From Pocillopora damicornis (lineage: Eukaryota), in NCBI RefSeq assembly GCF_003704095.1, contig NW_020844818.1, positions 310,001 to 374,000 on the forward strand: DNA of 64,000 nucleotides, in the 5' to 3' direction. The translations under genes and the position numbers were made by a program. The notes under the pieces are model-generated. The model searched no databases. It was given only the letters and a program-made list of their open reading frames with translations, and was not told the DNA's origin. This document shows, in pieces, positions 37,103 to 46,754 of the stretch. Within the stretch, counting starts at the first letter, position 1; every line of letters starts with the position of its first letter.

Positions 37103-38071
37103 TTACCTAAGCAAGAGTGGACAAACTTTGAATATAAAAAGTTCAGAGGCAATTGTGAAAACTATACAAAATATATAAAGAAAAAATGAAGGTCCAACGT
37201 GTGTTCCTTGTGGTAACTTGTATGGTTTTCCACCAATCTCTGGCATTTGAAATCCCATTGGGAATGTGAGGGCTGCCAGACAGAACACTATCACTACAAA
37301 ATGAAAAGGAACATGTTAATGAAGAAATTTCTAACATTAAGCATCTAATTTCTCCCAACAGTATCACCCTTGAATCAAACATTAAGTTCATGAGAATAGA
37401 GGAAATGATGGCAAGCTCAAGAAGCTCCTGATTGTTAAACAAATTCTCCTTATAAGAGACACAGGAAATGTATAGAGAACAGTATGGAGAACTTACATAC
37501 TGATGTTAGAGTGTAAAGGGTAAATACACATCATGACAGTCTGTAATACTTCTACTGCACAAGTGGCAAATAAACTATAACAGACTGGTACCTTTTACTA
37601 TGAATGATGTGTAGCAGTAGGGTAAATTAACAAGAGCAAATGGAGAAGTTTGTGATAATCATTTGAAGGAAATACGTTCACAGGGGTAAAAAGATCAACC
37701 AATTAAAAAAAAAAAACTCTTCCAGTCATTTGAACCTTGGCATACATATAAGAAAAATGAAACTTAACTTGTCAAATCAAAGATTATTCTTCAACTTCTG
37801 GCATGTACCAACAATGTTCAGAAATTCATGTTGCAATCTTCAAATCTTTAATACTTACTTCCAAGAAAAACAATCCACTTGGCTGCATCCACAATGGAAG
37901 GTTTCCAGGGAGACACCAGTAGCAAAAAGCAAGTGAGTGTCAGAGCTACCACACCCAAAATCATAAACAATAGAGTAGCCAGCCACTCTTGGGGTAAATC
38001 AGGGGTAACACACACCTCTGGTTGCCCCTCTGATTTCTGACACATGACAGTCAACCCCAGTCTAACAGAAC
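37103..38071 (-). CDS. MOSMO: Modulator of smoothened (C16orf52-like), last two coding exons; first exon not visible
   Basis: Exons 38071-37859 and 37293-37103, phase-compatible. Motifs PDLPQEWLATLLFMILG, FCLAALTFPMGF, GGKPYKLP, KVCP. Confidence 0.88.
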
Positions 38072-38108
38072 CTTATTGGAACAAAAGAGAAGATTGAAGA
38101 GTTAGAAC

Positions 38109-38208
38109 NNNNNNNNNNNNNNNNNNNNNNNNNNNNNNNNNNNNNNNNNNNNNNNNNNNNNNNNNNNNNNNNNNNNNNNNNNNNNNNNNNNNNNNNNNNN
38201 NNNNNNNN
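38109..38208. other. Assembly gap (100 N)
   Basis: Run of N; a second gap lies at 55964-56063. Confidence 1.
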
Positions 38209-38284
38209 ACAAGGAAACGCTATTTGTTTGAGGAGTAACAAAACTTTCGTTTTTCGTCCTTGTAGTGTAGAGAAATTAGCGTAA

Positions 38285-40204
38285 ATGATGAATAATTCGC
38301 CATATATTTTACAGAGGTTTGTTTCAGCGAAAGAAACTGAAGAATTCACATCCTATTCTAAGGAAAAAACAATTCACGAACATGGAAGTATGTCTGGAGA
38401 GGAAGCGAGAACATTTTATGAAGTTGTTCTTTCTTCATCCAATTCTGATGCAGGAAGCGTTTTAGCGTCAAAGGATAACAAAACGGAAAAGAATAATTCA
38501 AGGCAAAAGGGAAATGGGTCATTGGCGAAATCAACCTACTCAAAACCAACTGAAAAGGATTTGAAATCCAAAAAGAATAGTGGTCACTCCAGATCCATAC
38601 CTACTAAATTTCGTTCTACTTCTGATCACAGACTAGTAAACGATTTCTTAAAAAATGCTCAAGAGGGAAATTTAAGACGAGTCCAAGAACTGCTTTCCAA
38701 TGATAGCGTAGACATAAATGTATGTGACCAATTTTCATGGACAGGATTGATGTGTGCATCTCACAATGGGCAGATTCACATTGTTAAATATTTACTTGAG
38801 AGCGGAGCTTTGTGGAGATCTTATGAAGACTCACAAGGAAGAACAGCTTTCGACCTTGCAAAAATTGCAGGACACCATGATATAGCAGAACTTCTCAGAT
38901 CTTACAGTGGTCAGCGTAAAAGCCAACGCATAAAATCCTCTTATGAAGAGCATTCTGCTATCACAGCACAACCCAAATTTTGGTGCTCTGTATGCGAACA
39001 AGAGTTTACAGATCTGAAGGGTACACATGAAGGTTCAACTGTGCATTTGTTCAATATACAACGCAAGCCTCAAAAAACATTCTATTATATTCCAGAAGGC
39101 AATGTAGGGTATCAATTGATGCTAAAGTCTGGCTGGAATGAAGATCGAGGTAAACTTAATTCTCACGTTTTCTTTAAATCCACAGTACTAGTTTCATACT
39201 GAATTAAGGGCAGGAAGTACTGTCATTTCCCCTTCTAAACTGCCAGGAAATTTGTTTAAGGCAAAACTCATCAAGGAAATTATGCTAACATAAACACAAC
39301 TTAGAACACATACCTGTGTTACTGTGGCAACTTGACAAGCAGCATTGCTCCAAGCAAGACGTTTTTGAAAGTTGCCATTTGGCACACCACCACTGGAAAT
39401 TCAAATTTTGTCACAATTGCTTATTAAAGGAAAATGATGAACAATTTATATTATTGCATGCCAATGGTAGCAGCTTCACTGCTGCACACAAATTTTAAGA
39501 TTGGTGATCATTTCCTTTGTTCTTGTGACCCTTGATGTTTGATTCCAGGGTGATCTTGTCAGGAGAAATTAGAAGCTAATCATTCTCAGGGATCAAAGGA
39601 TTAAAATTATGAAGATTTTCTTTACTCTCTTACAACAAAAAGAGCTGTAGCATGGAGAACTGTCCACGAGAAATAGACACAGGTCTAGTCACTTCATGCT
39701 ACAGAAATCAGTGATAAGCAATGATAGTTACAGCTCAAAAAGATTTAATCTTATAATCAATTTTTGGATCAATATCAGTATTTGGGCAACTTCCCACCTA
39801 CCCCTCCCCTAACCCAACATTAACCCTACCTTGTTATCAATAGACTGTTGTTGGGTTAGGGGAGGGGTAGGTGGGCAGTTGCCCAGATACTGATATTGAT
39901 CCCAATTTTTTTTAAAATTCTGTTTATCACAGGTTTAGGCCCAGCTGGTGTTGGAAGAAAATACCCAGTGAAAACAGTTCTCAAGAGAGATCGATTAGGA
40001 TTTGGTAATAAGGGATGTCAACCAGCAAGAGTGACACACTTTGGTCCACATGATCACAGTTCTGTGAAGAGGAGAAAATCAATCACCAAGAAGGAAAAGA
40101 ACAGAGGAACAATGAAAAAGACTTGTAGGAGGGAAAGGGTGGCTAAAGAGAAGAAGGAAAAGAATTGGGAAAGAAATATGAGGATATACATGAACACTGA
40201 ATAA
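38285..40204 (+). CDS. GPANK1: G-patch domain and ankyrin repeat protein 1
   Basis: Exons 38285-39149 and 39933-40204. Ankyrin repeats (DQFSWTGLMCASHNG), zinc-finger-like CSVC...HEGSTVHLF, G-patch NVGYQLMLKSGW...GLG...PVKTVLKRDRLGFG split by the intron. Confidence 0.92.
39766..39902. mobile_element. Hairpin MITE with 8-bp target-site duplication
   Basis: About 53-bp near-perfect TIR starting GGATCAATATCAGTAT; CAATTTTT at 39758-39765 and 39903-39910. Confidence 0.85.
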
Positions 40205-40830: not shown

Positions 40831-43660
40831 CTATGGAGAGGCAGTATTTGTGAAAGTTTTCAAATACCAGTCTGGGAGGACACAGTGCAGTTCATCAGAC
40901 TTCTCTGTAACTGTCACTTCTTCAAATGGCTCTCTCCAGGAGAACATGTACATCACCCTTGGTCCACTTTTTATAACCACTGTCTTCACCCAGTCAAGAA
41001 ATCTGTCAAGAAAGTTCAAACAAATGGAAGAATCCCAGAGATCCTCCTCATCTCGTGCAAGTCTAGGTATGGCCAGAGTGTTGTATGTTTGCAATTCTTT
41101 CACATGGCCACTGTGATCCCTGTAGCCACAAATGATTTTTGGCACACCAGCCAAATAAGACTGCGCCCACCACTTGAGCAGTTTGAAGCGTTTGAAGGTG
41201 TAGTGGTGGTGGTGGTTGTGAGGTTTCAAGGAGGTTTTCAATTCAATATAATTTGCTGGGGCTTCTTCATTATCCTACAAGAAAACATGGAATTTAAATT
41301 TTAAGCTGTGATGTAATTATTAACCCTTTAACCCCTAAGAATGATTAGTAGCTAATTTCTCCTTACAATATCATCCCTGAGGAATAAAGGAAATGATCCC
41401 CAACTAAAGAAGCTCTCGATTGTTAAACAAATTCTCCTTGTCAGCACCTTGGGAAATGTGTAGAGAGCAGTATGGAGAATATGAATAGCTATGTTAGGGT
41501 GTAAAGGGTTGATCAGATTCCTTTGCAAGAATGAAGAACCCACTAAAATTTGCCTCCCTCCTAACATGTGGCTTCATAGTTAAGTTAGTAATGGCACCCA
41601 ACGGGTATCTGGGAGGCACAGATTCCCTTTCTGTCAAAGCCTTAATTCTTTTTCAGGCTTCCTCTCTGTAATTTTTCAAATTGGAGCTTACTCGCAAAGA
41701 TCATTTCTTTACAGAATCTGAAAGTCTGAGGTTTGGTTCCTCATGGGTACTCAGATTTTTTTCTTTGTCCCATGCTTGTAAAAAGACAGAAAAAACATCT
41801 TTCTCTATTTCTTTACTTGGTTGTATGTTACACAACTAAGATATCATCGACAGGGTTGTTATTAGAATCCAGTAGGCAGTGGAAACCTGCTGGCTGTCAG
41901 ACCATTTGGTCCCTGAGCTACTTGGTGAATTGTGAGCAAAGACAGAAAATAAGTATTTTTTAACTGATTTCAACATAAAAGTCTGGCTAAACAGAATTAC
42001 TCAAATATGCCCCAGAATGCTGCAATTCATGTTTTAAAGGTTTCAATTTTTTCCAGCAGAGTAAGCCTCCCCAACCCCCTCCAGGAGGGTGTGTTACAAA
42101 CATGCTTACTGAGAAAGCACACTGAGTTCAGATCATGCATTTAGTACTAACATTTTCACAAAAACCCTGCACTAAAACAAAACATACCTTGGTGCAGCAG
42201 TCCACTTCAGCACCAAAAACCAATGAGTGTTTATTAAGCCTAGCCCTGATTACAGTGACAAATTCCTCACTATCATTAATAGCATGGCTTTCCTTGGCTT
42301 TTTCCTCATTTTTATTATGATGACTTTTGTCTACCAGGGATGTAACATAGCTTTCAAAGTTATGACCCCAGTAGCACATCTCTTTGTGTCTTTCTTCCAT
42401 ATTCTCCCTCTTGTCCTTGTTTTCCTCAGTTTCTATCTCCATAATGTAGATTGTTCCATTGTGTAGCACAGCTGCCATTTGCCAAGATTCTCTTGTTTCA
42501 TAGGGTGTGCACATTATCTTTGTCAAGAGCCCCCTCCATGTTATGAAATCTGTGTGTAAGCTGAAAAAATAGGAAGATGTATTTTTATCTGATGCCCTAG
42601 ATACCAAACTTTTCACTGGAAAAAATGAATTTTGAATCACGACCAAAACAAGTTCCTTGAATGAAAGTCTGAGGTCTGAAAATGCAAAATTGTTGTGTTC
42701 CAAAAGAAATTTGATTCACAAATCATCCAGTGATCAGAAAACAATTGCCTTACACTATGATAATTTATCATATAATTTGAGGGTTAATGAAGCAAGCTAA
42801 GTCAATTTGCTTTTGATAAATTCTTTGTAATTACAATATTTGGTAAATTAACACCCAAAGCCAAGTCAGTAGTAAAGTTTGGCTTCTTGGTGACATTAAA
42901 TACTCCGCTTTTTATCTACACCCACCCCCCTGAGGAATCCTAAAGGTCAATTTTCTTTTGGCACCAGTAAGAAAATAAAATCCTCTTGTGGAAAAAGTGT
43001 AGACCCCCTTGCAAAAAAAAAAAAAACAGTCGTACCTGGCTACTTGGAGTAGTGCGATTTCCGCATATCTCCAAATTTCATTACACATAAAGTTCTTGGA
43101 CAAATGGCGAAAACAATATGTTACCTCTGGGAATACCTATTCGGTTTACAATAGCACAAGGCTGTGTAGGAATCTTAGCCTACTTGGAGGTTCAGACGGG
43201 AAAGAAAAACGTCTTCTTTGCAGATTTCCTAGGAAGACACTTGTTTGTTAAAATATAAATAATCTCACCTGGAAAGTTGAGTTTTACCTTCTGGAGGAGT
43301 CTCGCTCGTGGGACTTTGAACGATTTCAAACTTCTCGTGGTGACATTGTACCCACTGCAACAAGTTTTCCAACCCTTCTTTTACATCTTCGTTCCGTTTC
43401 ACAAAGTCTTTATACCCAGCCCTGAGGTCGAAGTTTATATCACGCGGAGGACTAAAATACTTCAATTGTCTCTTATCATCGTGAAACCTTCTATGATCGT
43501 CTAAAGAGAAATGCCCTACTTCGATTGGTTGTCGATAAAAAGGAAGTCTTCCTCGAAAAGCATCCACAGGTTGGACTGCAAAGCTTTTCTGTGTTACAGA
43601 GCTATCTTTTCGAGTTTTCTTTGATGCTGCAGCCTCAGATACATCCGAACGACGTTTCAT
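40831..43660 (-). CDS. DXO: Decapping and exoribonuclease protein (DOM3Z/Rai1 family)
   Basis: Exons 43660-43269, 42560-42188, 41274-40831. Motifs QPIEVGHFSLD, FITWRGLLTKIMCTPYE, YWGHNFE, GAEVDC, YIELKT, KLLKWWAQSYLAG. Confidence 0.94.
41320..41512. mobile_element. piggyBac-like MITE in DXO intron
   Basis: TTAAccctttaaccccta...tagggtgtaaagggttga. Confidence 0.75.
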
Positions 43661-44459
43661 GTTGGACTGTTATTTAGAGTAAATTGAAAGCGCCTTTAAA
43701 GCGTCTTTCGGTTTCATTCGTCCACCATGTTGGAACACGGTGCGAATAGAATTCTGGTCTATCAAGATAGTTTGACTGTTCCGTTGTGTAAGCCTTTATT
43801 GAATGTCCCCGATTTCTGTCCGTAACTGATACTTCTCAGATTATATTCCAATAGTTCGTATGGAATGGTTCACGATTTTAGCTCAAATATTCCTTCAAAT
43901 AACATAGCATTAAAAGAAAAAAGCAGTTTGATTGTGCAAAGGCCCTCCCAGGCCCCAGCTGGCAGATTTAGCAAAGGCTGTACTGCACTTCGAAAGGAGC
44001 CTATTAACAGGCTCCTGGCTGTGGCAAGAAACAGCTCCCTCAATTCAAGTTCTACTGACATGCGAATTCAGGAAAAATTTCAGAACTTAAAAGACTCATC
44101 AAAATTAGGTTGGGAATGGTGATGGTACCGACCTCAAGTAAGTGATAATTGGATCATGAAAGCACTGACTCCATACTGTTCTCTCTTCATTTTGTGGAGC
44201 TGGATGGAAAGGAGAATTTGTTTACTTCTCTAGTTGGTGATCAGTTTCTTCATCCACACAATCTTAATGTTTGATTCAGGGGTGACATTGTAAGGAGAAC
44301 TAGATGTCAGTCACTCTTAGGGGTTAAAGGATTGAAAGGTCCTATTTTTCATTTTTAAGTAGCACTTTTAAAAATCAAAGGGCAAGAACTTTGGTAGTTG
44401 ACCTTAATAGGGAATTTTTTATTGTGTAGAATATAACAGTAACTTTTTTTTCAAATTTT

Positions 44460-45614
44460 TTAACTGTTCCCTTCAATGTCATCATCTGAAGAAGAATCGT
44501 ATGCAGAAATAAGTGAGATGCTTCCGAGTTCATCCTTCTTTTCCATAATTGTCTCATTCCCTGGACGTTTTGAATGTGACAGTTCATTTGCTCTGTTAAG
44601 TAACACCTGCTGTTTTGACCACTGAATAAGATCTGAAAGTGTCTTTGGTGGTGATTTACTCACTGTATTGTATCCTGATCCTTGATTAGTCTCAGTCAAG
44701 TGAGCTGCATGTACATCATACTTCATATCTGTGCCAGTGTTTGGCTCATAGTACTGATAATCTGTATCTGGATAGTAACCAATTGCCTCTCCACTCTCTT
44801 TAAGGTCATGATCAATGTTACGGCGTTTCTGTGGGAAAGAGTTATCCTTAACATTATCATGATGTGGAAGTCTGAGCGGTCCATCATAGTCTTGCAATAT
44901 CGCAGAAGCAAGTCTCTCTTTGCTGTTCTCTATTTTACGCTTCTTAACCCACGGGTTTGGGTCTTCTGTGGCCCACCGTATATTCAAAATCTCTTTATTA
45001 TCGAGAGCTTGACTTTGCATGGCCTCTTTGGCAAATTCGGCGTTGGAGCGGTTTTTGTAGCGAACAAACGCGACACCTTTTGACTGTAACACCCTAACGT
45101 TATCGATCTCTCCCCACTCTTTGAAGTGTCTATAAACAATCGATTGGAGGTCGGAAGTTACCGATATTCCACCGACATAAAGGGTCTTAGCAGTTTGTTC
45201 ATCCGCAGAAAACGAACCAACACCACTCTGGTCGTCTCGTACATGTTCGTGTCTTTCTCTACCGAAGCAGTCTTTTGTGGTGTCCAAAGTTGATTCAAAT
45301 TCATCCGACGGTAAATTATGGATCCAGGAACACTCATATCCTAACGGACAACATCCTCTCGAAAATTTCAAGCAAATATATGTCCCATCCCACTGTCTTA
45401 AACTGCCTTTTGTGGTTCCACTGTCCTCTGTGATACTGCATCGAGTGGTAGCTGGAATCTTCTCGCGAAAATGACCTCTTTCTCCAACATTCTTATTATA
45501 CCAAATGTTGTATGTCTTTCCGGGAAAATTTTCAGATCTCTGAGGACCAACCGGCTGAGAAATTTGCTTCCTTGCATTTCGCCTGCTTGCATGTGAATTT
45601 GCTGCCGCCGCCAT
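44460..45614 (-). CDS. CWC2: Pre-mRNA splicing factor Cwc2-like (Torus region, CCCH zinc finger, RRM); intronless
   Basis: Single ORF, open from 45698; likely start at AAGATGGCG (ATG 45614). Motifs GKTYNIWYNK, CLKFSRGCCPLGYECSWIH (C-x7-C-x5-C-x3-H), DCFGRERH, DDQSGVGSF, KTLYVGGI, AEFAKEAM, LNIRWATEDPNP. Confidence 0.9.
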   Translation of the reverse strand: MAAAANSHASRRNARKQISQPVGPQRSENFPGKTYNIWYNKNVGERGHFREKIPATTRCSITEDSGTTKGSLRQWDGTYICLKFSRGCCPLGYECSWIHNLPSDEFESTLDTTKDCFGRERHEHVRDDQSGVGSFSADEQTAKTLYVGGISVTSDLQSIVYRHFKEWGEIDNVRVLQSKGVAFVRYKNRSNAEFAKEAMQSQALDNKEILNIRWATEDPNPWVKKRKIENSKERLASAILQDYDGPLRLPHHDNVKDNSFPQKRRNIDHDLKESGEAIGYYPDTDYQYYEPNTGTDMKYDVHAAHLTETNQGSGYNTVSKSPPKTLSDLIQWSKQQVLLNRANELSHSKRPGNETIMEKKDELGSISLISAYDSSSDDDIEGNS

Positions 45615-45761
45615 CTTGATTCCATCCGGGAAAGGACTGGGACTAAATCTCGTACCAGACCTCTTTCGCATTTTTTTCAAAATGGCCGATTTGAACATGT
45701 TGTGAGGTCGAGGGAAGGAAATTCTGAGAAAACTCGAAAAGAGAACACTTGAGAAAACCTC
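45615..45761. promoter_or_regulatory. Putative bidirectional promoter of CWC2 and LYRM7
   Basis: Divergent ATGs 147 bp apart; YY1-like caaaatggccg near 45678. Confidence 0.55.
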
Positions 45762-46754
45762 ATGAGCAGTTTAAGATCAAAGGTAGGAACAGTAATCCAA
45801 ATTTGGCATAGTTAAGACAGTTTTGATCCAATGAGCAATAGAACTGTCTTTTTCTGGGTTTTGAAAGATAAGGATGTTTCTTGTTTAAATTCAAAAAAGA
45901 ACGTTTCTAACTTGATGGTGACAAGTGAACTTAAAATGGGACAAAGAATTGCAACCACATCGTTTGCAGACAATTTTTTTTACAAGGAGTGAGGGAGTGA
46001 GGGAGAGGATGGTAGAATATTGAAATCTCCAGAAGGTGTGCAATTGAAACCCAGTAGTAACCCTTACCCTGTACTGAACCAGAACAACGCAGACTTGCAC
46101 CGTTTCCTGAACTTCAGATTCGCTTCTTAACCCCTTACACCCTAACATCATTATGCATGCTTTCCATACTATTCTCTATACAGTTTCTAAGTTGCTGACA
46201 AGGAGAATATGTTTAAAAAATCAAGAGCTTCTTTAGTTGGTGATCATTTCCTTTACTCTCACGACCTTAGTGTTTGATTTAAGGGTGATATTGTCTAGAG
46301 AAAAAACAATTAGATGCTAGTCACTCTAATGGGTCAAAGGATCAAAGTAACATCATAGATATGGATTGGATCAAGGGATCTCCTGGATTGGGAAATCATG
46401 CTGTAAATTGTCTTTGCAATGCCTCTCATCAGTATGTTTTTCTTGGCACCATTACACCAGGTGTTGTCTTGCTACCGGTCACTTCACAGAACGCGGCTTA
46501 AAGTTTTCAGAGATGACAGTTTTGCTTTAGAGGCTGGAAAACAGAGGATAAGAACTGAATTTCTAAAGCACAAAAATGAGATAGATCCAGCAAAAATTGC
46601 TGAACTTATTCAAATGGCAGAGGGTGCAGAGAAGGTCCTGAGGTGTAATATTGTGCAAGGCGTACAAACTGACAACGGAACATTCCGTCTGAGAATTACT
46701 GAGGACACTGAAATTCAAAACAATGCCCCACGTCCGTGTAAAAAAGATAAGTGA
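45762..46754 (+). CDS. LYRM7: Complex III assembly factor LYRM7/MZM1
   Basis: Exon 1 45762-45782 (MSSLRSK, then gtagga) and exon 2 46461-46754 (VLSCYRSLHRTRLKVFRDDSFALEA...VLRCNIVQG). Confidence 0.9.
46127..46345. mobile_element. piggyBac-like MITE in LYRM7 intron
   Basis: TTAAccccttacacccta...gggtcaaaggatcaa. Further copies at about 37340-37524, 44170-44334, 49573-49757, 59152-59370. Confidence 0.75.

What the first reader, a model, noticed from the sequence alone, without database searches (positions are those of the whole stretch)
44460..45698. Stand-alone fungal-type Cwc2 splicing factor in an animal genome, without introns
Seen: an uninterrupted ORF with TYNIWYNK, a CCCH finger, DCFGRERH...DDQSGVGSF and an RRM ending RWATEDPNP, flanked by ordinary intron-containing animal genes. 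Known: these are hallmarks of yeast Cwc2/Cwf2, which binds U6 at the catalytic centre; human and model bilaterians instead use RBM22, regarded as covering both Cwc2 and Ecm2/Slt11, and RBM22's N-terminal Cys-rich domain is not seen here. Inference: this lineage kept an ancestral separate Cwc2 (or gained it by retroposition or transfer), implying a spliceosome with an alternative or additional catalytic-core scaffold.
Basis: partly seen in the sequence, partly recalled or inferred. Interest (0 to 1): 0.8.

Follow-up and report, generated by a model that had tools for sequence, protein, structure and literature searches.

The report
Intronless yeast-type Cwc2 gene in coral
This stony-coral genome carries an expressed, conserved, intron-free gene for the yeast-type splicing factor Cwc2, alongside a second, WW-domain Cwc2 gene and the usual animal RBM22, so some animals keep splicing-core proteins that humans and model bilaterians lack.

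Summary
Window 44460-45698 (minus) is an uninterrupted 412-aa ORF with a Torus domain, a CCCH finger and an RRM. It matches S. pombe Cwf2 at E 5.5e-63 and human RBM22 only at 4.4e-11, and its predicted fold matches Cwc2/Cwf2 chains.

The gene is real. Independent assemblies keep the order LYRM7-Cwc2-DXO-ankyrin. Unspliced contigs in RNA libraries of four studies cover 44395-45625. dN/dS is 0.05-0.06 over the core. The true start is probably M29 (384 aa).

- The same genome has RBM22 (contig C905).
- It also has a second, intron-containing Cwc2 gene with a degenerate WW motif (C2282).
- That WW-type gene is shared with Trichoplax, Nematostella, an octocoral, a choanoflagellate and an ichthyosporean, and databases already name it "cwc2-like". 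Cwc2 in an animal is therefore not new in itself.

The window's gene is the rarer copy. It forms a narrow clade of stony corals plus one unnamed sister group. It sits in the opisthokont Cwc2 clade with Fungi, Fonticula and Monosiga (95/96). It is not a copy of the native WW-type gene (AU p 2e-5).

Vertical retention followed by intron loss is slightly favoured over transfer from an opisthokont microbe. Its role in the spliceosome is inferred from homology and not shown.

The parts
44460..45698 (-). Longest open reading frame, 412 aa including the stop codon: the Cwc2-family gene
   Evidence: the ORF listing; Pfam Torus plus RRM_1; S. pombe Cwf2 E 5.5e-63
44460..45614 (-). Probable true coding sequence, 384 aa starting at M29 (MAAAANSH...)
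   Evidence: RNA contigs end at 45556-45625; orthologs P0002, P0009 and P0029 start at this position; the Atlas record starts at residue 29
44395..45625 (-). Extent of the unspliced transcript seen as single colinear contigs in four RNA runs (three PolyA, one random-primed) from four studies
   Evidence: table 8: records 2, 10, 19, 28, with 2-8 mismatches and 0 gaps; flanking intergenic and intron bins have zero or near-zero depth (table 2)
45258..45584 (-). Torus domain (residues 39-147 of the 412-aa frame)
   Evidence: PF16131, 102.3 bits, profile positions 3-109 of 109
45318..45374 (-). CCCH zinc finger inside the Torus domain (C109, C117, C123, H127 in the 412-aa frame)
   Evidence: sequence; all four residues invariant in the 31-sequence family alignment (C81, C89, C95, H99 in M29 numbering); aligned to the finger of Cwf2 and Cwc2
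44964..45185 (-). RRM with RNP2 LYVGGI and RNP1 KGVAFVRY
   Evidence: RRM_1 8e-10; alignments
44751..44774 (-). Conserved C-terminal motif YPDTDYQY in an otherwise disordered tail
   Evidence: the family consensus keeps YPxTDxQY; the tail has low pLDDT; the tail evolves faster, dN/dS 0.23-0.38
44418..44423 (-). AATAAA polyadenylation signal, 16-23 nt upstream of three of the four RNA contig ends
   Evidence: sequence; contig ends at 44395, 44396 and 44402, with the fourth at 44428
45660..45782 (+). LYRM7 exon 1: 5'UTR plus ATG at 45762 encoding MSSLRSK. It is head-to-head with Cwc2 and overlaps the first 13 codons of the 412-aa frame
   Evidence: GT..AG junction 45780>46459 (cut +2, so 45782>46461) in all four RNA runs; sequence
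46461..46754 (+). LYRM7 exon 2 (LYR domain)
   Evidence: Complex1_LYR 1.4e-11
43269..43742 (-). First exon of the downstream DXO/RAI1 gene, a transcript separate from Cwc2
   Evidence: RAI1 2.5e-18; RNA contigs start at 43269 and none bridges to Cwc2, with zero depth at 43878-44031
44225..44299 (.). Copy of a high-copy interspersed repeat flanking the gene (second copy at 46228-46302, 79% identical)
   Evidence: RNA-contig depth in the thousands and many false 'joints' between the two copies

Best explanation
The ORF is a functional gene for a classic (yeast/fungal-type) Cwc2 splicing factor in a pocilloporid stony coral. By homology the protein folds into the compact Torus/CCCH-finger/RRM unit of Cwc2/Cwf2. 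It would contact the U6 internal stem-loop and the intron near the 5' splice site, be tethered to the Prp19 complex through its disordered C-terminal tail, and help hold the catalytic RNA core in its active shape before step 1. It is transcribed as an unspliced, probably polyadenylated mRNA from a short region shared divergently with LYRM7. It coexists with RBM22 and with a second, intron-containing WW-type Cwc2. Its most likely origin is vertical descent from the opisthokont Cwc2 lineage shared with Fungi, Fonticula and the choanoflagellate Monosiga. The introns would have been lost, by retroposition or otherwise, before the last common ancestor of the corals that carry it, and the gene would have been lost in most other animals. 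Shown: identity, fold, expression, purifying selection, synteny and phylogenetic position. Inferred: spliceosomal role, RNA and protein contacts, direction of descent.
For: Identity: Pfam Torus 2.8e-29 plus RRM. PDB best hits are Cwf2 at 5.5e-63 and Cwc2 at 1.5e-32, against RBM22 at 4.4e-11. CCCH, RNP1 and RNP2 residues are conserved. The AlphaFold core has pLDDT 82-95, and Foldseek's top hits are Cwc2/Cwf2 chains with target TM 0.56-0.71, against 0.21-0.26 for RBM22. Real and functional: 13 RNA runs from 5 studies hold it. Ungapped contigs of 1.13-1.23 kb appear in 4 studies while introns and intergenic bins are silent. AATAAA lies 16-23 nt before three of the four contig ends. dN/dS is 0.05-0.06 in the core and 0.11-0.17 overall. 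Not contamination: the LYRM7-Cwc2-DXO-Ank order is kept in L019, L017, the P0023 contig and the deep lineage L014. Coexistence: RBM22 exons on C905 match human RBM22 at about 5e-26 and 5e-25. The WW-type Cwc2 lies on C2282. Origin: in the careful tree the intronless clade is 100/99 and sits inside a clade with Fungi, Fonticula and the Monosiga group at 95/96, sister to the Monosiga group at 94/60. AU accepts intronless plus Monosiga group (p 0.47) and rejects intronless plus native WW-type (p 2e-5). Precedent for both protein types in one spliceosome: entries 9esh, 3jb9 and 9l5r each hold a Cwf2-type chain and a Cwf5/RBM22-type chain.
Against: No binding or splicing assay exists, so the function rests on homology (43-50% identity to fungal Cwf2 over about 230 residues). 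The clade is narrow: only 3 representatives at 50% identity among 1.84 billion, followed by a gap from 355 to 231 bits. Vertical descent therefore requires many independent losses in other animals. The sister relation to Monosiga has SH-aLRT of only 60. The other members of that group are unnamed, and several are long branches. Without those sequences the clade joined Fungi at SH-aLRT 99. The complete absence of introns in every member fits a transferred or retroposed gene as well as it fits intron loss. The trees are unrooted. Contigs cannot prove transcript ends or strand.
Confidence: 0.6

Rival explanations
1. Horizontal transfer. An ancestor of these corals acquired an intron-poor Cwc2 gene, or its cDNA, from an opisthokont microbe such as a fungus, a nucleariid or a choanoflagellate-like associate. 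The gene landed beside LYRM7 and DXO, borrowed the LYRM7 promoter region, and was kept as an extra splicing factor.
For: The distribution is narrow, with a sharp score gap to all other sequences (561/377/355 bits, then 231 bits to the chytrid Polychytrium). No member has an intron. The native animal Cwc2 is the WW-type gene, and the window's gene is rejected as its copy. Before Monosiga and Fonticula were added, the clade grouped with Fungi at SH-aLRT 99. ESM-Atlas feature neighbours are ascomycete and basidiomycete CWC2 clusters at 0.96. The head-to-head position at an existing promoter is a common way for an incoming gene to gain expression.
Against: The clade is not nested inside Fungi in any tree. 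Holding it with Fungi while excluding Monosiga and Fonticula costs 16.9 lnL (p 0.065). The best tree places it beside a choanoflagellate, as vertical descent predicts. GC content and flanks give no sign of foreign DNA. Any event would be old, predating the split of complex and robust stony corals and their sister group.
Confidence: 0.3
2. Retrocopy of the coral's own WW-type Cwc2 gene that lost the WW region and then diverged quickly.
For: An intron-containing Cwc2 paralog exists in the same genome (C2282). The window's gene has no intron and lacks the N-terminal WW segment, as a 5'-truncated retrocopy would. The YPxTDxQY tail motif is shared.
Against: AU rejects a clade of intronless plus animal WW-type genes (delta lnL 55.8, p 2e-5). 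The WW-type clade (100/100) groups with SAR (95/87), away from the window's gene. BLAST scores to the native paralog (202-205 bits) are no higher than to fungi, Amoebozoa or oomycetes. Diagnostic columns favour the classic type 4 to 1. No poly(A) remnant or target-site duplication is present; the flanking 75-nt repeats are copies of a high-copy element.
Confidence: 0.03
3. The gene is a Cwc2 by descent but no longer acts in the spliceosome core. With RBM22 and the WW-type Cwc2 covering that role, the intronless copy has taken on another RNA-binding job or a tissue- or stage-specific one.
For: Three related proteins in one genome invite division of labour. The C-terminal tail, which in yeast is the partner-binding part (from my own knowledge), evolves several times faster than the core: dN/dS 0.23-0.38 against 0.05-0.06. 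Human RBM22 has documented roles outside splicing (PMC11027413, title and abstract).
Against: The Torus/finger/RRM core is under very strong constraint, and all family-invariant residues are kept. The YPxTDxQY motif and the acidic Ser-rich C-terminus are retained. It is found in RNA libraries from several unrelated studies, which suggests broad expression, although contigs give no expression levels.
Confidence: 0.15
4. Artefact: contaminating fungal DNA in the assembly, a pseudogene, or a chance ORF.
For: The protein looks fungal by similarity, and NCBI annotation pipelines often did not call it in corals: only 3 of about 28 coral clusters come from NCBI.
Against: It lies on a contig between intron-bearing animal genes. 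The same gene order is seen in independent assemblies, including a Tara metagenome scaffold and contigs of 0.26-1.1 Mb. The frame is intact in more than 20 orthologs with dN/dS far below 1. It is found in RNA libraries.
Confidence: 0.01

Closest known systems
S. pombe Cwf2 / S. cerevisiae Cwc2 (NTC-related U6-binding splicing factor)
   Same: Same domain order: Torus with embedded CCCH finger, then RRM, then a disordered tail. 43-50% identity to Cwf2-type chains over about 230 residues. Same predicted fold. Same clade in the tree (95/96). No STL11_N domain.
   Different: It is encoded in an animal, has no intron, is a second Cwc2-family gene in its genome, and coexists with a human-like RBM22. 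No biochemical data exist for it.
Animal/holozoan WW-type Cwc2 ('pre-mRNA-splicing factor cwc2-like': Acropora palmata P0197, Montipora P0198, Trichoplax P0237, Nematostella P0238, Dendronephthya P0236; this genome's copy on C2282)
   Same: Torus plus RRM core, about 37-44% identical. Shares the YPxTDxQY tail motif. Present in the same genome.
   Different: It has an N-terminal WW domain: clear in Trichoplax and Stephanoeca, sub-threshold in Sphaerothecum, Dendronephthya and Nematostella, and undetected by Pfam in the stony corals. It has at least 6 exons in this genome. It is widespread in non-bilaterian animals and unicellular holozoans. It forms a separate clade (100/100) that groups with SAR proteins, and AU rejects uniting it with the window's gene.
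RBM22 (human) / Cwf5 / Ecm2-Slt11
   Same: Distantly homologous CCCH finger and RRM (E 4.4e-11). Same region of the spliceosome in solved structures (from the literature, PMC8833553).
   Different: RBM22 has the STL11_N Cys-rich domain and a Pro-rich tail, both absent here. The fold match is poor (TM 0.21-0.26). The coral's own RBM22 is a separate multi-exon gene on C905.
Monosiga brevicollis 'Pre-mRNA-splicing factor cwc2' (P0315, XP_001748146.1)
   Same: Classic type without a WW domain (Torus starts at residue 22). Nearest named neighbour of the coral clade in the best tree.
   Different: Its gene spans 2164 nt for a 486-aa product, so it has introns. Only 46% identical over the core.

Membership tests
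Cwc2/Cwf2 family | Torus domain (PF16131) at the N-terminus of the folded core | tested here: met
   102.3 bits against a cut-off of 29, covering profile positions 3-109 of 109
Cwc2/Cwf2 family | CCCH zinc finger embedded in the Torus domain | tested here: met
   C109/C117/C123/H127 in the sequence; invariant in the 31-sequence alignment; aligned with the finger of Cwf2 and Cwc2
Cwc2/Cwf2 family | RRM directly after the Torus/finger unit, with RNP2 LYVGG and RNP1 (K/R)G(V/I)AF(V/I) | tested here: met
   RRM_1 8e-10; motifs aligned and conserved
Cwc2/Cwf2 family | Compact Torus-finger-RRM fold as in solved Cwc2/Cwf2 structures | tested here: met
   AlphaFold2 core pLDDT 82-95; Foldseek top 13 are Cwc2/Cwf2 chains, E 7e-22 to 2e-10, target TM 0.56-0.71
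Cwc2/Cwf2 family | Groups with bona fide fungal Cwc2 in a phylogeny | tested here: met
   clade of Fungi, Fonticula, Monosiga group and the intronless coral genes at 95/96
Cwc2/Cwf2 family | Binds U6 snRNA and the intron, and is a component of Bact/C spliceosomes | not testable with these tools
   needs CLIP, spliceosome purification or cryo-EM in a coral or sea anemone
Cwc2/Cwf2 family | C-terminal tail that tethers the protein to Prp19 (from my own knowledge of yeast work) | tested here: inconclusive
   a disordered tail with a family-wide YPxTDxQY motif and an acidic Ser-rich end is present, but which part binds Prp19 was not tested
RBM22 / Ecm2-Slt11 family | N-terminal STL11_N Cys-rich domain (PF21369) | tested here: not met
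   no hit in the ORF; the genome's STL11_N exon is on C905 and matches human RBM22 at 5e-26
Processed retrogene of the native WW-type Cwc2 | Intronless copy that branches with its intron-containing parent; poly(A) remnant and target-site duplication | tested here: not met
   it is intronless, but AU rejects grouping with the native gene (p 2e-5); no poly(A) tract or TSD, and the flanking repeats are a high-copy element
Horizontally transferred fungal gene | Nested within, or sister to, a donor clade to the exclusion of the recipient's relatives | tested here: inconclusive
   with Fungi at SH-aLRT 99 when Monosiga and Fonticula are absent; with the Monosiga group at 94/60 when they are present; AU p 0.065 for Fungi-only against 0.47 for the Monosiga group

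The most novel reading that the evidence does not exclude
[quoted passage not shown] The classic copy would have been captured from an opisthokont microbe and wired to the LYRM7 promoter. The two Cwc2 proteins would then define alternative core configurations used for different intron classes or cell states.
Probability: 0.15. Interest if true: 0.7.

Novelty: new member of a known kind. Interest (0 to 1): 0.42.

Why it matters
Reviews and structure papers treat animal RBM22 as the single replacement, even a 'fusion', of yeast Cwc2 and Ecm2. [quoted passage not shown] The data here show that RBM22 and Cwc2 are separate old genes that still coexist in non-bilaterian animals. They also show that Holozoa carry two distinct Cwc2 lineages, and that one coral-centred group keeps both together with RBM22. 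This moves the loss of Cwc2 to later in animal evolution, apparently on the way to bilaterians. It also provides natural systems for asking what RBM22 took over and whether Cwc2 and RBM22 are redundant. The protein itself is an ordinary Cwc2, and automatic annotation already labels relatives as 'cwc2-like'. The value is evolutionary and comparative, not a new mechanism.

Tried and rejected
1. Naming unnamed hits. The listing of cluster members on 10 coral and WW-type clusters gave no names. Later calls named Monosiga, Fonticula, Basidiobolus, Stephanoeca, Sphaerothecum and several Amoebozoa. The deep intronless sister clade (P0029-P0041) and most of the Monosiga-side group stayed unnamed.

2. 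The look-up of encoding contigs gave no DNA for P0034 and P0023, no record for P0342 and P0359, and no taxon for P0326 and P0338.

3. A fungal-donor reading looked strong in the first well-sampled tree (intronless clade plus Fungi, SH-aLRT 99). It weakened once Monosiga, Fonticula and Basidiobolus were added and tested.

4. Retrocopy of the native WW-type gene was rejected by the AU test.

5. The two 75-nt direct repeats flanking the gene were considered as target-site duplications. They are 79% alike and belong to a high-copy element with RNA depth in the thousands, so I rejected that idea.

6. The weak Torus matches on C3436 and C3871 are not Cwc2. One is a 215-aa single-CCCH protein and the other an isolated CCCH exon.

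7. My first LYRM7 exon-2 query was out of frame; I corrected it.

8. Shared-state counts (4 against 1 columns; indels 2 against 1) are too few to weigh much.

9. The search of earlier findings by place found nothing near the window.

10. Spliced models of the C2282 paralog and of RBM22 were searched exon by exon, by reference, only. Database orthologs (P0196-P0198) stand in for it.

11. No RBM22 protein id was on hand, so the trees are unrooted.
Full report
**The observation.** The ORF listing finds one uninterrupted ORF at 44460-45698 on the minus strand. Pfam assigns a full-length Torus domain (PF16131, 2.8e-29, 102 bits against a cut-off of 29) followed by an RRM (8e-10), and no STL11_N domain. 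Among solved structures the best matches are S. pombe Cwf2 (5.5e-63, 216.8 bits), a thermophilic-fungus homolog (3.3e-61) and S. cerevisiae Cwc2 (1.5e-32). Human RBM22 reaches only 4.4e-11, over the finger and RRM. The alignments show the CCCH finger, DCFGRE, GVGSF, RNP2 LYVGGI, RNP1 KGVAFVRY and RWAxxDPNP conserved. An AlphaFold2 model built from a 31-sequence family alignment has a confident core (pLDDT 82-95 over residues about 50-245, apart from one low-confidence loop) and disordered tails. Foldseek's first 13 PDB matches are all Cwc2/Cwf2 chains (E 7e-22 to 2e-10, target TM 0.56-0.71). RBM22 chains score TM 0.21-0.26. The protein is a Cwc2, not an RBM22.

**The genome and the neighbours.** The window is C1453:310001-374000 of a 234.35-Mb assembly in 4393 contigs. 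The closest named relatives of the protein are stony corals: Pocillopora meandrina, Montipora foliosa and Desmophyllum pertusum. A Tara metagenome scaffold carries a copy 97% identical in protein. I take the organism for a pocilloporid coral. The assembly size and contig number match what I remember of the published Pocillopora damicornis assembly, but that is memory and not a test. Downstream on the same strand lie three RAI1/DXO exons (40831-43660). Upstream and divergent lies LYRM7 (Complex1_LYR). Beyond DXO is an ankyrin-repeat gene.

**Is it a real, working gene?**
- *Synteny.* The order LYRM7 - Cwc2 - DXO - ankyrin gene recurs in an independent Pocillopora-like scaffold (L019), in another coral contig of 264 kb (L017, 69% identity), in an acroporid-like contig of 960 kb (P0023), and in a 1.1-Mb contig of a much more distant relative (L014, 52% identity). 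In L014 LYRM7 is inverted but still adjacent. This excludes contamination and shows that the gene has sat in this place since the ancestor of the whole clade.
- *Expression.* Thirteen RNA runs from five studies (eleven PolyA, one oligo-dT, one random-primed) hold 60-78% of the stretch's sampled words. In four runs from four studies a single contig of 1129-1230 nt lies colinear on 44395-45625 with 2-8 mismatches and no gap. The intergenic bins, the LYRM7 intron and most of the DXO intron have zero or near-zero depth, so the signal is RNA and not stray DNA. No contig joins Cwc2 to DXO or LYRM7.
- *3' end.* An AATAAA at 44418-44423 sits 16-23 nt before three of the four contig ends.
- *5' end.* All four runs show a GT..AG junction 45782>46461 on the plus strand. 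It joins a first LYRM7 exon (5'UTR from about 45660, ATG at 45762, MSSLRSK) to the LYR-domain exon. LYRM7 exon 1 thus overlaps the first 13 codons of the 412-aa frame on the other strand. The Cwc2 contigs stop at or before 45625, orthologs begin at the equivalent of M29, and the ESM Atlas holds the protein from residue 29. The real product is therefore probably 384 aa (CDS 44460-45614), made from a short divergent promoter shared with LYRM7. Contigs cannot prove transcript ends, so this stays probable.
- *Selection.* Nei-Gojobori dN/dS against orthologs at 78% and 69% identity is 0.16 and 0.11 overall. It is 0.06 and 0.05 in the Torus-RRM core and 0.38 and 0.23 in the tail.

A six-frame search of the whole assembly with the Torus model finds a second locus on C2282 whose match is split over exons. 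With STL11_N it finds one exon on C905.
- *C905.* The locus encodes, exon by exon, an RBM22. Two exons match human RBM22 at 5.1e-26 (5mqf_P) and 4.7e-25.
- *C2282.* The gene has at least six exons, 41-61% identical to the window's protein. Its first exon carries a WW-like motif in front of the Torus domain. Pfam does not call a WW domain in that exon.
- *Other Torus hits.* Two further weak matches (C3436, C3871) are unrelated CCCH proteins.
- *How the models were handled.* I searched these spliced models exon by exon, by reference. I made no joined protein, so database orthologs represent the paralog in what follows.
- *Earlier scan note.* The scan already has a first-reader note on that other piece of the genome (s1-780580). 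I reached the locus independently.

**The WW-type gene is the widespread animal Cwc2.** Searches seeded with WW-type proteins and the paralog's exon peptides, and then with the Acropora protein, recover named orthologs:
- Acropora palmata and Montipora foliosa ('pre-mRNA-splicing factor cwc2-like'), and Oculina patagonica
- the octocoral Dendronephthya ('cwf2-like'), and Nematostella
- Trichoplax sp. H2 ('Pre-mRNA-splicing factor cwc2')
- the choanoflagellate Stephanoeca and the ichthyosporean Sphaerothecum

Pfam calls the WW domain above threshold in Trichoplax and Stephanoeca. It is sub-threshold in Sphaerothecum, Dendronephthya and Nematostella, and not called in the stony corals. The same WW-Torus-RRM layout occurs in oomycetes, Blastocystis and other SAR lineages, and a partial WW+Torus protein occurs in Symbiodinium. 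'A Cwc2 in an animal' is therefore already in public annotation. However, none of the 15 top-ranked papers from my search pairs Cwc2 with cnidarian, placozoan or choanoflagellate terms. Reviews still present RBM22 as the animal stand-in for, or a fusion of, Cwc2 and Ecm2 (PMC8833553; PMC11833078).

**Where the window's gene belongs.** It forms a tight clade with stony-coral sequences and a deeper, unnamed sister group at 46-54% identity. An exhaustive HMMER scan of 1.84 billion representatives collapses this clade to three clusters (561, 377 and 355 bits). The score then drops to 231 bits for the chytrid Polychytrium, and nothing lies in between. Outside its clade the protein scores about the same (183-218 bits) against the coral's own WW-type paralogs, fungi, Amoebozoa and oomycetes, so similarity alone does not point to an origin.

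Trees on the Torus-RRM columns do better. A first 54-row tree put the clade with Fungi (SH-aLRT 99) and the animal WW-type genes with SAR. The AU test rejects uniting the intronless clade with the animal WW-type genes (delta lnL 55.8, p 2e-5). That removes the idea of a retrocopy of the native gene.

Placing all 150 top representatives in one tree brought out Basidiobolus, Fonticula alba and Monosiga brevicollis as nearby named sequences. Monosiga's protein has no WW domain, and its gene has introns. With these added, a careful IQ-TREE run (LG+C20+F+G4 PMSF; ultrafast bootstrap / SH-aLRT) gives:

| Clade | Support |
|---|---|
| Intronless clade | 100/99 |
| Intronless clade + Monosiga group | 94/60 |
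| + Fonticula | 89/35 |
| Whole opisthokont set (Fungi, Fonticula, Monosiga group, coral clade) | 95/96 |
| Holozoan WW-type clade | 100/100 |
| Holozoan WW-type clade + SAR | 95/87 |

AU accepts the coral clade with the Monosiga group (delta lnL 0.1, p 0.47). It disfavours, without rejecting, the coral clade with Fungi alone (delta lnL 16.9, p 0.065). A small count of diagnostic columns leans the same way: 4 shared with the classic type against 1 with the WW type.

**Reading of the origin.** The window's gene belongs to the same lineage as yeast Cwc2, and its nearest named neighbour is a choanoflagellate. That is what vertical descent within Opisthokonta predicts. I therefore put retention of an ancestral classic Cwc2 first, with loss of its introns before the clade's common ancestor and loss of the gene in most other animals. 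Transfer from an opisthokont microbe remains a serious rival for three reasons:
- the clade is narrow;
- every member lacks introns;
- the Monosiga link is weakly supported and rests on one named sequence among long branches.

The sister group of the stony-coral sequences could not be named. By the yardstick of the WW-type gene (Acropora to Nematostella 58%, to Dendronephthya 53%), its 46-54% identity would fit other hexacorals, but that is an inference. Why Holozoa hold two Cwc2 lineages at all is left open, because the trees are unrooted. It could be ancient paralogy with reciprocal loss, or an old transfer of one of them.

**How it most likely works.** By homology with Cwc2/Cwf2, the Torus, finger and RRM form one RNA-binding unit. 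That unit contacts the U6 internal stem-loop and the intron downstream of the 5' splice site. The tail links it to the Prp19 complex, and the protein promotes the active conformation of the catalytic centre for step 1. This function is taken from the yeast literature as summarised in PMC8833553 and PMC10158995. Solved fungal spliceosomes (9esh, 3jb9, 9l5r) contain a Cwf2-type chain and a Cwf5/RBM22-type chain side by side. The coral can therefore use Cwc2 and RBM22 together without any new architecture. Which of the two coral Cwc2 proteins sits in the core, and whether they alternate, is unknown. None of this was or could be tested here.

**Verdict.** The gene is a new member of a known family with an unusual distribution. 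Its interest is moderate and evolutionary rather than mechanistic.

Noticed in passing
G000:C2282 about 688,400-692,600 (minus); L011 1394-5565: A second Cwc2-family gene with at least six exons and a WW-like motif before the Torus domain. It is the ortholog of 'cwc2-like' genes of Acropora, Montipora, Nematostella, Dendronephthya and Trichoplax.
   Followed up: yes
G000:C905 about 81,000-85,400 (minus); L012 1000-5320: A multi-exon RBM22 gene (STL11_N, CCCH finger, RRM, Pro-rich tail). Its exons match human RBM22 at about 5e-26 and 5e-25.
   Followed up: yes
window 44186-44339 and 46034-46341: Two copies of a short high-copy interspersed repeat flank the Cwc2 gene (core 75 nt, 79% alike). RNA-contig depth there is in the thousands, and many contigs 'jump' between the copies. 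The repeat family was not identified.
   Followed up: partly
window 45615-45782: Cwc2 and LYRM7 are transcribed divergently from a region of at most a few tens of bases. The LYRM7 5'UTR overlaps the upstream in-frame ATG of the Cwc2 frame. In the distant relative L014 LYRM7 lies on the same strand as Cwc2 instead.
   Followed up: yes
L017 5485-6900: In another coral a reverse-transcriptase (RVT_1) element is inserted between LYRM7 and Cwc2, widening the gap to about 5.4 kb.
   Followed up: no
proteins P0042, P0043, P0046, P0049, P0054, P0266 (metagenome and metatranscriptome contigs): Cwc2 proteins fused to a C-terminal SAM domain (Torus + RRM + SAM). They form a tight clade near Amoebozoa in the trees. 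The organisms are unknown.
   Followed up: partly
window about 38100-38300: A run of N (read as X in ORF 38062-38349) just upstream of the ankyrin-repeat gene at 38285-39202.
   Followed up: no
window about 50000-53700 (minus): Exon-like ORFs with ABC-transporter motifs. Two short ones gave no Pfam hit, but the orthologous loci list ABC_tran and ABC2_membrane_3 genes in the same position.
   Followed up: partly
G000:C3436:474017-474664 (L003 1273-1920, minus): An intronless 215-aa protein with one CCCH finger and an N-terminal acidic Ser-rich stretch (LVPDYGSDSSSSS) that resembles the C-terminal end of Cwc2 proteins. It gives a weak Torus hit only and has no RRM.
   Followed up: partly
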